Source of the DNA: Camelus dromedarius
Lineage: Eukaryota
Assembly (NCBI RefSeq): GCF_036321535.1
Contig: NC_087461.1
Location: 21,204,001 to 21,268,000, forward strand
Direction: 5' to 3'
DNA: 64,000 nucleotides
Position numbers and translations under genes: made by a program. Positions 49,966-53,000 of the stretch are shown here, one piece after another (positions within the stretch are counted from its first letter, which is position 1; the number at the start of each line of letters is the position of its first letter). The notes under the pieces were generated by a model, which saw nothing but the letters and a program-made list of their open reading frames with translations, was not told the origin of the DNA and made no database searches.

Positions 49966-50076
49966 GTTTGGCAAACATCGAAAAGATGACAAGATTGAAA
50001 AAACGGGTAGAATCAAAGCGCGGGAGGCCCCCCCGTCGGAGGAGGAGAGAGCCCGGATGGCGCGCGAGCAGGAGAG
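49966..50076 (+). CDS. PARD3: PARD3 111-nt symmetric (phase 2-2) exon of the long isoforms, (R)[36 protein letters not shown](R)
   Basis: ttttttgttgtcaacAG|GTTTGGC ... CAGGAGAG|GTAGGC. Phase fits the 22859 donor. First 14 codons identical to recalled human [14 protein letters not shown]. Confidence 0.96.
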
Positions 50077-53000
50077 GTAGGCTGCGGGCACTCCCGGAGA
50101 CCCCGCGGAAGGGGGGTGCTTTTTTTTTTTTTCCCCCATTCTTTGTTTTCTTTTTCTAATATAATGAGGTTGCATTCCATTGATACTTATTTTTTTCTGT
50201 GTCAGTCCAAATATTGGTGGTTGTGGGATGAATAGAATGTAAAGAAACGTGAAAAGAAAACACCTTATGTTTATTTGAGGGAATAAAGTGCATTTGATTG
50301 GTTTTAGTTAAGATCTTTGCACAGGAGATGGTAGGGCTTATGAGATCAATAAATAAACTACTGAATTTATGATCACTTTTAAAATCACAAGAAATATGGT
50401 AAAATTCGGTCTCATTCATCTACAAGTATATAGTATATTATAATCATTTTAAAGCAATACTCCTCTGAAAGTAGAACTGTTTGAGTTTATGTATCTCATA
50501 TAAAATATTTTGATTTCTAACAGGAATTGGGGAGGCTACTGATTTTTTTACTGTGTTGTTTTCCTATCAAACCTGCCATTTCTTTTTTCTCCTTCTGTTT
50601 CACTGTCACACTTTGTGAGACGTTTTCTGCTTAAATTTTATTCCATCACTTCCAGAAAGATTGTTATCTATTGTTGAATCATTTCATGCTGGGAACCCAA
50701 AGACTACTGAAATGAATGAAAAGTCACTTTAAGCAGACACTCGAAGACCGTTTTCTAAGTGATTAGCATTTTTCTCATTATAATTCACAGGGGATGAGAG
50801 AGCCAGCTCACGCCAGGGTTACTAGAGTTCACAGGCATGGAGCAAGTCTCTCTGTAGCATCCATTTCATTTTCAGAGTTGCCGCGGAAGACTTCCTTCTC
50901 TTACTTTTAATAACTGGGGGGTCAGGGAGTTCCTGCTGCCTCGATCAAGGTTGTGAACCTCAACATGGCCGGTAGCCAGGACTCTAGCCCAGCGTCTTAG
51001 GACCACGTCTGCTGTGCTGAGTACAGTCCTAGAGCCAGGACACCTGCCACCTCTCACTTCACAGGGGGAAGAAGAACTAGACAGGGGGTCCTACCAGTTT
51101 TCTGTAGAAGTGATTCACGTTCAGATATTTCCCATCCATCTTTCCCAGACCCCTGAGGATTGTTCTGCTGGGCCAGTCTGATTCTCTGTGTGTGGCTTTT
51201 CAGGTATAAAATCTGTATAAGTGGGGAACATGTGGACTTTGTGATGCAAGTTTGGGTTTACTGTTCTGACTCTTCTCCAATTTTGAAAAAGTCATTCCAC
51301 CTTTCTTGCTTCCTTGACTCTCTCTAATCCTCACCAGTTTGGAAATCCTCACACTTACTCGTAAACTCACTGTTTTTAGACCAGGGTGTGCAGTGTTCCG
51401 TGGTGTGTGGAATACAGCATTTAAGTACTCACGAGTGCAGACGTCTCTCCTAAGAGGCTTTTCTATCCCTTAAGGAAGCGTGTGTACCAGGTAAATGGAT
51501 GGACTCAGCTTTATCCACGGGCAGATGTGTGACTCGGTTAGTGAGCTGAGGGTGAGGAGGAGTCATTAGACTTCTCCTGTCTTGATGCCAGCCAAAGGGA
51601 GAGCCCCCTGACCCCGTTTTTCAGATTCTAAATATTCCTTTTATGCAGTTTAAGATGAGCTGCCCTGCTTCCATGCAGAATTCTATCAACTTTTTCCAAA
51701 ATACTTCTACAATGCAAAGTCAAATTTTTACAGCCAAACAATGGTTTTTACATAATGGCTGCCCTTGTATCATTAATTTGCCTAAGGCATGGTTCACCTC
51801 TCAGCTGTGCTTTCAATCTCCATGTCTGTGCCTATTATGATGTAATACTTCTGGGAACTAGGTTGATGCTAATGAATTTACAATGTCCAGGAGGCCTAGA
51901 ATAAAGAATCTTTTAGGGCCAAGTGAATGATCCATTAAAAAAAAAAAATCAGTTAGCTTCGTAATTGAAGAAAACTGCTCTACTTTGTGTTTCAGTAATA
52001 ATTTTTACAAATATGTTTTATTTAAACTCATGGATCTTACAACAGCAGTATGAGATGTTGAATTGTGTAAGAGATACCTGTTTAGTGTTTGTGGTTTTGA
52101 TAAGCAATCCTGCTCTGGGGTAACCTCGCTCCTAGTGTGTCTGTCTGTTGGCATCACTCCTTTTGAGAATGGAAGCTGCAGCTTCCTTGGGAAGAGTCTG
52201 ATTGGAGGTAATAGATAAAAAGAAATAAACCACAGCTTATATTCTCACCACTGCCTTTACTTCACCACTGACTGGCAGGGAAGCATCTTCCATAGTGTTA
52301 TTTACTTACTGTAGCTATCTGAGTTCCAAAAACGATTTTGGCTGATTCCAAATGAAAATAGAAAACCTGACATCCCTTCGTGATTAGTTATGATGTGTCC
52401 ACATACCCAGCTGTTTATTGGTCCATACCAATCCATGAAACCTGAATATTACCCAATATAGAGTATCAAAAAATGGAAAGGACAGTGAATATCCTTTAAA
52501 ACGTTTTTCCTCCCACGGTAAGATCTATTTAGATAGTGAAAGTAAATTAGATTCTTCGGAGCAGGGCTCTGAGATTGAATTCGACGTCACCCATGCTAAC
52601 TTCCTCCCTTTCCTCCCACTCGCTGTAAGGAGGGGTCTTGAATCCGTGCTCTTTACGTAGGAGAATGGGTGAGAAGGGTCCCCACGTGGTCTTCCCTGGC
52701 CTCAGACTTGAGTCTGCCTGCCTGAGGTCTCCTCTTGAGAAGTCAGGTGTCACGGGTGACGTTAGCTGGTCCTGTGATGTGCTGTTTGGACCCCTGGCTC
52801 GGAGCGCTGAGCCCAGGTACCCCACCCTTTCAGTGATGCTTTGGCCACCGGGAGACACTAAGCCAGGCAATTGGTGTTTGGAGCTGAGGTGTGAATCCAG
52901 TGCTTGCCGCCGCCTCCTGGCTTCTCCTTCAGGTGTGCCTCGGGGGAGGGAGCCCTACTGGCTCGTGTCCACCACCCGAGAGGCTGGGGCTCCAAGCCCC

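What the first reader, a model, noticed from the sequence alone, without database searches (positions are those of the whole stretch)
50018..50115. Half of a PARD3 exon rewritten by a sharply bounded GC/CpG micro-patch
Seen: within one 111-nt exon, 49966-50017 is 35% GC (18/52) while 50018-50076 is 78% GC (46/59). There are about 12 CpG in 50018-50110 and AT-rich intron on both sides. Recalled human sequence: [37 protein letters not shown]; here [37 protein letters not shown]. That is 0 changes in the first 14 codons and 9 in the last 23, all to GC-rich-codon residues (A, R, P). The patch continues into the intron, which argues against protein-level selection alone. Inference: a local GC-biased gene conversion hotspot has fixed amino-acid changes, including two prolines at the start of the Par-3 coiled-coil region.
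Basis: partly seen in the sequence, partly recalled or inferred. Interest (0 to 1): 0.7.

Follow-up and report, generated by a model that had tools for sequence, protein, structure and literature searches.

The report
GC-rewritten half of camel PARD3 exon

Summary
Exon 49966-50076 is 35% GC in its first 52 nt and 78% GC in its last 59 nt. The stretch 50018-50115 carries 12 CpG.

It is not an assembly error. The 901-bp stretch around it is held word for word in 14 DNA runs, and all holders together come from 12 studies. The exon is held in runs under three organism labels.

I recovered the orthologous exon and introns from host-DNA contigs of at least four other mammalian lineages and one more distant vertebrate. 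All of them carry the AT-rich ancestral form.

On the camel branch the patch (50010-50114) has 24 weak-to-strong (W>S) changes, 0 strong-to-weak (S>W) and 3 S>S, among 47 ancestral A/T and 35 G/C sites. There are no indels. Third codon positions, first and second positions, and 39 nt of intron are all hit.

The patch is the sharpest peak of a wider camel-specific W>S drive. The upstream intron shows 86:18, against 26:32 and 34:28 in the other two lineages. A second focus lies at 48900-49499.

Best reading: GC-biased gene conversion overrode purifying selection. This is a new member of a known kind.

Not resolved: whether llamas and alpacas share the patch, and any direct recombination or allele-frequency evidence.

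The parts
49966..50076 (+). 111-nt coding exon. It encodes the segment [14 protein letters not shown]... at the start of the C-terminal coiled-coil region of PAR-3/PARD3. An AG acceptor precedes it and a GT donor follows it.
   Evidence: Searches give the sequence and frame. The orthologous exon with identical boundaries is found in other vertebrates. The gene name rests on recalled PARD3 sequence plus the upstream aPKC-binding exon found. No database returned a name.
50010..50114 (.). The weak-to-strong substitution patch. It covers the 3' half of the exon plus the first 38 nt of the intron.
   Evidence: There are 24 W>S, 0 S>W and 3 S>S changes at strictly polarised sites (47 ancestral W, 35 ancestral S). 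The patch is colinear with the outgroups, with no indels. 77.6% GC, 12 CpG.
50077..50115 (+). Intronic part of the patch. It includes an A>G change at donor position +5 (50081), which moves the splice donor towards the consensus.
   Evidence: 8 W>S, 1 S>S and 0 S>W among 14 W and 8 S polarised sites.
50116..50128 (+). T13 run that marks the 3' edge of the patch.
   Evidence: Downstream (50116-50344) the camel branch falls back to 10 W>S: 2 S>W over 113 W sites.
49900..50009 (+). Strongly conserved block: the last 66 nt of the intron plus the first 14 codons. It forms the 5' edge of the patch.
   Evidence: There are 0 W>S changes among 48 polarised W sites in 49900-49999. The only change in the first 14 codons is a synonymous G>A at 49999.
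48900..49499 (.). Second, broader intronic W>S focus on the camel branch.
   Evidence: 63 W>S against 8 S>W. In 49200-49299, 17 of 43 W sites changed and GC rose from 0.39 to 0.61.
8625..8837 (+). Upstream PARD3 exon encoding the conserved aPKC-binding region (...[22 protein letters not shown]...). It serves as a gene-identity anchor and as a contrast case.
   Evidence: Between camel and the two outgroups, 19 differences are W>S in direction and 2 are S>W, with one amino-acid difference seen in the alignment. The polarity is less secure here.

Best explanation
GC-biased gene conversion (gBGC) acted on the camel lineage. Repeated meiotic recombination focused on about 100 bp at the exon-intron junction favoured G/C alleles over A/T alleles during heteroduplex repair. 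W>S mutations were therefore fixed far faster than neutral, whether they fell in the intron, at silent codon positions or at amino-acid-changing positions.

The bias was strong enough, or constraint on this part of PAR-3 weak enough, to fix ten amino-acid replacements towards residues with GC-rich codons (Ala, Arg, Pro). The patch is the hottest focus of a regional W>S drive across the 3' part of camel PARD3.

Shown here: the direction, density, clustering and site-class independence of the substitutions, and that the sequence is real. Inferred: that recombination-linked biased fixation, rather than biased mutation, is the cause.
For: 1. The state is derived and lineage-specific. Three roughly equidistant mammalian lineages (pairwise p-distance about 0.25), plus two more distant contigs, L009 and L013, all carry the AT-rich form.

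2. Direction. The patch has 24 W>S, 0 S>W and 3 S>S changes. 51% of ancestral W sites changed, against 17% in the upstream intron (Fisher p = 6.8e-7).

3. The changes include many transversions (A>C, T>G) as well as transitions. This fits a bias for any G/C base, not A-to-G editing or deamination.

4. The patch arose by substitution in place. There are no indels against the outgroups, 32 of 35 ancestral G/C bases are kept unchanged, and no second copy exists in the window.

5. All site classes are hit: 7 of 9 W third positions, 11 of 24 W first and second positions in codons 15-33, and 8 of 14 W sites in the intron.

6. Regional context. The camel branch shows 86 W>S: 18 S>W in 48884-49965, while the two other branches show 26:32 and 34:28. 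There is a second focus at 48900-49499. Camel is about 10 GC points above its orthologues at 8-11 kb. The aPKC-binding exon shows 19 W>S-direction: 2 S>W-direction differences, with one amino-acid difference seen in the alignment.

7. The sequence is real and fixed. It is held at 1.00 of the sampled words in 14 DNA runs under labels A and B (all holders together span 12 studies). The exon is held at 1.00 in runs under labels A and C.

8. The same signature is the published hallmark of gBGC in exons. Berglund et al. 2009 (PMC2631073) describe W>S clusters that extend into flanking non-coding DNA and the Fxy case. [quoted passage not shown]
Against: - There is no direct evidence of recombination at this site.
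- No allele-frequency data were obtained, so biased fixation cannot be separated from a local W>S mutational bias.
- Changing about half of all W sites needs a long-lived or recurrent hotspot. That is not what short-lived PRDM9-type hotspots are expected to give, and I found no literature on camel PRDM9 or hotspots.
- The outgroup contigs are host DNA of unnamed species, so the branch on which the changes fell (Camelus only or all camelids) is unknown.
- The sharp 5' edge could be set by purifying selection rather than by the end of a conversion tract.
Confidence: 0.75

Rival explanations
1. A local mutational bias, not a fixation bias. An error-prone repair process tied to recurrent breaks or to an unusual DNA structure at this spot produced A/T>G/C mutations at a high rate, and they then fixed by drift.
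For: It would give the same W>S-only cluster crossing the exon-intron border. Phylogenetic counts alone cannot tell the two apart.
Against: - No known germline process mutates A/T to G/C through both transitions and transversions while sparing all 35 G/C sites.
- Ten replacements in a conserved exon would have to fix by drift against purifying selection.
- The kilobase-scale W>S excess around the patch (86:18) matches the recombination-linked pattern described in PMC2631073.
Confidence: 0.1
2. Positive selection. Either the PAR-3 protein was selected (new Ala/Arg/Pro residues change a binding surface or the coiled coil), or a new GC-rich DNA/RNA element was selected (a splice enhancer, a CpG-rich regulatory site).
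For: - Ten replacements fall within 19 codons of an otherwise conserved protein.
- The donor +5 A>G change strengthens the splice site.
- CpG observed/expected of 0.86 resembles an unmethylated island.
Against: - Every polarised change except three S>S is W>S, including 7 of 9 silent third positions and 8 intronic sites. Protein-level selection predicts no such direction and no intronic tail.
- A similar purely intronic focus lies 700 bp upstream.
- The predicted helix is unchanged.
- At 98-105 nt the patch is too short for the usual CpG-island definition.
Confidence: 0.07
3. Replacement by foreign sequence. A non-allelic gene conversion or templated patch was copied from a GC-rich paralogue, retrocopy or nearby template.
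For: The patch has sharp edges and is short.
Against: - The patch aligns base for base with the ancestral sequence, with no indels.
- It keeps 32 of 35 ancestral G/C bases, where a foreign sequence would not.
- It includes intron, which excludes a retrocopy donor.
- No similar sequence exists elsewhere in the 64-kb window.
Confidence: 0.02
4. Assembly or polishing artefact in this one genome.
For: GC-rich stretches flanked by homopolymers are error-prone.
Against: 14 DNA runs hold 100% of the sampled words of 49600-50500, and all holders together span 12 studies and two organism labels. The exon is held at 100% in 18 further small runs from 5 studies under labels A and C.
Confidence: 0.01

Closest known systems
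Fxy (Mid1) in Mus musculus, whose 3' part moved into the pseudoautosomal region
   Same: Part of a conserved gene, introns and exons alike, is driven towards G/C on one lineage. All replacements are W>S: 28 in Fxy, as summarised in PMC2631073. The other part of the gene stays unchanged.
   Different: Fxy is affected over several kilobases and has a known cause, relocation into a region of obligatory crossover. Here the extreme part is only about 105 nt, and no recombination cause has been shown.
Human accelerated regions and exons with biased clustered substitutions (HAR1-type; accelerated exons of Berglund et al. 2009, PMC2631073)
   Same: These are short lineage-specific clusters of almost purely W>S substitutions in otherwise conserved sequence. 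They extend into flanking non-coding DNA and raise the share of nonsynonymous changes.
   Different: The density here is higher: at least 27 polarised changes in about 105 nt, with about half of all A/T sites changed. However, the camel branch is also much longer than the human branch.
[quoted passage not shown]
   Same: A single exon on one lineage shows clustered synonymous W>S changes together with potentially deleterious nonsynonymous W>S changes.
   Different: Those episodes are described as short-lived and PRDM9-like. The camel patch looks saturated and sits in a region with a general W>S drive, closer to that paper's persistent or 'overflowing' class.
GC/CpG peaks at stable recombination hotspots in dogs and birds (from general knowledge, not checked here)
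   Same: Narrow GC- and CpG-rich spikes are built by long-lasting gBGC.
   Different: Those lineages lack PRDM9-directed hotspots. Camels are not known to lack PRDM9, and I found no data on this.

Membership tests
gBGC-driven biased clustered substitutions | A cluster of substitutions confined to one lineage in otherwise conserved sequence | tested here: met
   At least 27 camel-specific changes fall in 50010-50114. The upstream 110 nt has 0 W>S changes. All the other vertebrate lineages recovered keep the ancestral form.
gBGC-driven biased clustered substitutions | A strong excess of W>S over S>W, through both transitions and transversions | tested here: met
   24 W>S: 0 S>W in the patch and 86:18 in the flank, against 26:32 and 34:28 on the two other branches.
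gBGC-driven biased clustered substitutions | Synonymous, nonsynonymous and adjacent non-coding sites are affected alike | tested here: met
   7/9 W third positions, 11/24 W first and second positions, and 8/14 W intronic sites changed.
gBGC-driven biased clustered substitutions | Coincides with high meiotic recombination or a hotspot | not testable with these tools
   No camel recombination map is available here. Literature searches found nothing.
gBGC-driven biased clustered substitutions | Derived W>S alleles segregate at higher frequency than S>W alleles | not tested
No polymorphism data were obtained.
Protein-level positive selection | The excess of change is restricted to amino-acid-changing sites, with no directional base bias and no spill into the intron | tested here: not met
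   Silent and intronic sites are hit at least as hard, and all the change runs towards G/C.
CpG island (classical definition: at least 200 bp, GC at least 50%, CpG o/e at least 0.6; recalled) | Length of at least 200 bp | tested here: not met
   The patch is 98-105 nt long. GC of 77.6% and o/e of 0.86 would qualify.
Non-allelic gene conversion / templated patch | A donor sequence exists, and the patch differs from the ancestor at random rather than only at A/T sites | tested here: not met
   No donor exists in the 64-kb window. 32/35 ancestral G/C bases are kept and there are no indels. A genome-wide donor search was not possible.
PARD3 (PAR-3) gene | The exon sequence matches PARD3 and lies downstream of the aPKC-binding (CR3) exon on the same strand | tested here: inconclusive
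   An exon at 8625-8837 (+) encodes the motif I recall as PAR-3 CR3, and 181 vertebrate ORF homologues exist. No database returned the name PARD3, and PDB, Pfam and the Atlas gave no hit. The name therefore rests on recalled sequence and an unchecked neighbouring note.

The most novel reading that the evidence does not exclude
Camels may have unusually long-lived, narrowly fixed recombination hotspots of the kind seen in dogs and birds. Such hotspots would build about 100-bp GC/CpG spikes, self-reinforcing through unmethylated CpGs, even inside conserved coding exons. The PARD3 patch, the focus 700 bp upstream and the many CpG-rich spikes at 20-40 kb of this window would then all be products of one hotspot regime that differs from the fast PRDM9 turnover of most mammals.
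Probability: 0.15. Interest if true: 0.6.

Novelty: new member of a known kind. Interest (0 to 1): 0.35.

Why it matters
This is a compact textbook-quality case of a neutral transmission bias rewriting protein sequence. Ten replacements, including loss of two conserved hydrophobic residues and gain of two prolines, went into a conserved polarity-scaffold protein with no sign of adaptive cause. Cases like this produce false positive-selection calls in camel adaptation scans. They also mark where long-term recombination has been concentrated in a genome that has no recombination map. The contrast within one gene is instructive: the aPKC-binding exon absorbed the bias almost only at silent sites, while the coiled-coil exon let it through. 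That contrast gives a natural read-out of relative constraint along PAR-3.

Tried and rejected
No variants, splice joints or per-organism sequences were seen. After that call, no letters of 48518-48563 were sent to any search tool. Only local scripts on the closed machine read the whole window.
- The search of protein representatives with the 37-aa exon gave only two short ORFs and no full-length PAR-3.
- The search with the minus-strand ORF across the patch, meant to find camelid contigs, found nothing.
- The search for related loci in metagenome contigs: the first query was too short, and the 64-aa ORF then gave no confirmed locus.
- PDB, Pfam and ESM Atlas gave no hits for either exon.
- A paper search for a recalled human tryptic peptide found nothing. 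Paper searches on camel PRDM9 or gBGC found nothing specific.
- Full-length PARD3 proteins of named species could not be reached, because the homologue search only sees proteins of 0.55-1.75 times the query length.
- Tandem repeats in 49000-51000: none.
- Rejected readings: assembly error, ADAR-type editing or deamination (the base changes are of the wrong kinds), and a retrocopy or paralogue donor.

Full report
**Observation.**
  - 49966-50017: 34.6% GC.
  - 50018-50076: 78.0% GC.
  - 50018-50115: 77.6% GC with 12 CpG (observed/expected 0.86).
  - Flanking 500 bp on each side: 37.8% and 30.6% GC.
- The exon has an AG acceptor and a GT donor. It translates to [37 protein letters not shown].
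- Only 0.09% of 100-bp windows in the 64 kb are as GC-rich. The patch is the only spike of 70% GC or more in the AT-rich right third of the window.
- No tandem repeat is involved.

**Is the sequence real?**
- The 901-bp stretch 49600-50500 is held at 100% of its sampled words in 14 DNA runs under two organism labels (A and B). All holders together come from 12 studies.
- The exon alone is held at 100% in 18 small runs from 5 studies under labels A and C.
- Two runs on record as RNA (label C) hold 0.08 of the words of the 901-bp stretch. That is about what the exon alone would contribute, so it is compatible with spliced mRNA. This is an inference only.
I therefore saw no variants or splice joints.
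- Earlier notes of this scan call the genome a camel.

**Getting orthologues.**
- In the camel, the exon lies in an open frame that starts in the conserved upstream intron and stops right after the exon (49886-50080).
- Searching that 64-aa ORF found the same accidental ORF called on host-DNA contigs from other animals. I fetched those contigs.
- The contigs align to the camel introns over up to 5 kb at about 70% identity.
- They fall into two mammalian groups:
  - X: L001-L008.
  - Y: L010-L012.
- X, Y and camel are roughly equidistant (p-distance 0.24-0.27).
- L009 and L013 are more distant.
- All of them carry an AT-rich second half that encodes forms like KIKIQDSLTSEEERIRMKQEQER.

**What happened on the camel branch.** I counted only sites where X and Y agree and camel differs.
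- Patch 50012-50115: 24 W>S, 0 S>W and 3 S>S changes, among 47 ancestral A/T and 35 ancestral G/C sites.
- Upstream intron 48884-49965: 86 W>S and 18 S>W, among 497 and 209 sites.
- Over that same upstream-intron stretch (48884-49965), the X and Y branches show 26:32 and 34:28.
- The W>S rate per W site is 51% in the patch against 17% in the flank (Fisher p = 6.8e-7).
- The changes are a mix of transitions and transversions.
- The patch is colinear with the outgroups, has no indels and keeps 32 of 35 ancestral G/C bases.
- No other copy exists in the window.
- This is therefore substitution in place, not pasted-in sequence.

**By site class** (codons 15-33; intron).
- 7 of 9 ancestral A/T third positions changed.
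- 11 of 24 A/T first and second positions changed.
- 8 of 14 polarised A/T sites in the intronic 39 nt changed.
- Ten residues changed: K15R, I18A, Q19R, D20E, S21A, L22P, T23P, I/L/V29A, K32A, Q33R.
- The first 14 codons have one silent G>A.
- One intronic change (50081, A>G) puts G at donor position +5.

**Shape of the signal**.

| 100-bp bin | W>S changes / W sites |
|---|---|
| 49900-49999 | 0/48 |
| 50000-50099 | 22/43 |
| 50100-50199 | 7/44 |

- The 5' edge coincides with a block that is almost invariant across mammals: the last 66 nt of the intron plus the first 14 codons. Constraint may therefore sharpen that edge.
- The 3' edge is a T13 run.
- A second, broader focus lies at 48900-49499 (63 W>S : 8 S>W).
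- Between the two foci the ratio is about 2:1.

**Regional context.**
- An upstream exon at 8625-8837 encodes the motif I recall as the aPKC-binding region of PAR-3. It has 181 unnamed vertebrate ORF homologues.
- Around that exon, camel is about 10 GC points above orthologous contigs.
- Within the exon, camel differs from two outgroups by 19 W>S-direction and 2 S>W-direction changes, with one amino-acid difference seen in the alignment.
- The two outgroups there are each other's closest relatives, so polarity is less secure than at the patch.
- The drive therefore seems to span at least 40 kb of the gene. Selection held at one exon and gave way at the other.

**Mechanism.**
- The pattern matches what the literature treats as the signature of GC-biased gene conversion in coding sequence:
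  - W>S clusters on a scale of 1 kb or less.
  - Clusters that run into flanking non-coding DNA.
  - Clusters that raise nonsynonymous change.
- Fxy is the classic case (PMC2631073). Exon-specific gBGC episodes are described in PMC12290510.
- As a rough inference, a W>S rate about 7-13 times that of ordinary neighbouring sequence would need a population-scaled bias of about 10, sustained or recurrent.
- I rate gBGC at 0.75.
- Phylogenetic counts cannot exclude a purely mutational W>S bias.
- Protein-level or element-level selection fits poorly with the silent and intronic changes and with the purely intronic twin focus.
- A foreign donor and an assembly error are effectively excluded.

**Protein consequence.**
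- AlphaFold single-sequence models of the camel peptide and an ancestral-type 37-aa peptide both give a helix at residues 25-36 with similar confidence.
- The two prolines therefore lie just before the helix start, not inside it.
- The replacements inside the helix (I29A, K32A, Q33R) keep helix-forming residues but remove a conserved hydrophobic side chain.
- This evidence is weak, because the peptides were modelled in isolation.

**Limits.**
- The outgroups are unnamed.
- Llama and alpaca were not reached.
- No database returned the gene name.
- There are no recombination, methylation, polymorphism or splicing data.

**Verdict.** It is a striking but ordinary new example of a known process.

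Noticed in passing
L010:1119-1335 and L011:1079-1220; L012:1101-1182: All three contigs of outgroup lineage Y carry a structurally altered copy of this exon. In L010 and L011 (different studies, 4.6% apart) the exon is followed, after codon 21, by a shared unrelated AT-rich sequence. L012 lacks 36 nt (12 codons, in frame) of the 5' half. This is either real disruption of a frame-preserving, perhaps dispensable exon in that lineage, or an artefact of metagenome assembly.
   Followed up: partly
window 49488-49642: A 155-nt intronic stretch is 76% identical to the most distant contig (L013, whose exon peptide differs most from the others). It looks like a conserved non-coding element. It lies between the two W>S foci, where camel-branch change is low.
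   Followed up: no
window 49900-49965: The last 66 nt of the upstream intron are almost invariant across the mammalian contigs. Such conservation next to a 111-nt in-frame exon is typical of regulated cassette exons.
   Followed up: no
window 20000-40000: A 20-kb domain of 50-61% GC contains dozens of 100-bp CpG-rich spikes. The maximum is 14 CpG and 78% GC near 27032, and another spike lies at 11920. This contrasts with 31-47% GC (per 2-kb bin) beyond 46 kb. No outgroup DNA was available to polarise these spikes.
   Followed up: no
window 8625-8837: The aPKC-binding exon of PARD3 sits in a CpG peak (10 CpG per 100 bp, 65% GC). Its synonymous sites are strongly shifted to G/C relative to two outgroups, while the protein is nearly unchanged.
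   Followed up: partly
window 2575-2722 and 54454-54690: Two runs of N (148 and 237 bases).
   Followed up: no
It was not examined further or sent to any search.
   Followed up: no
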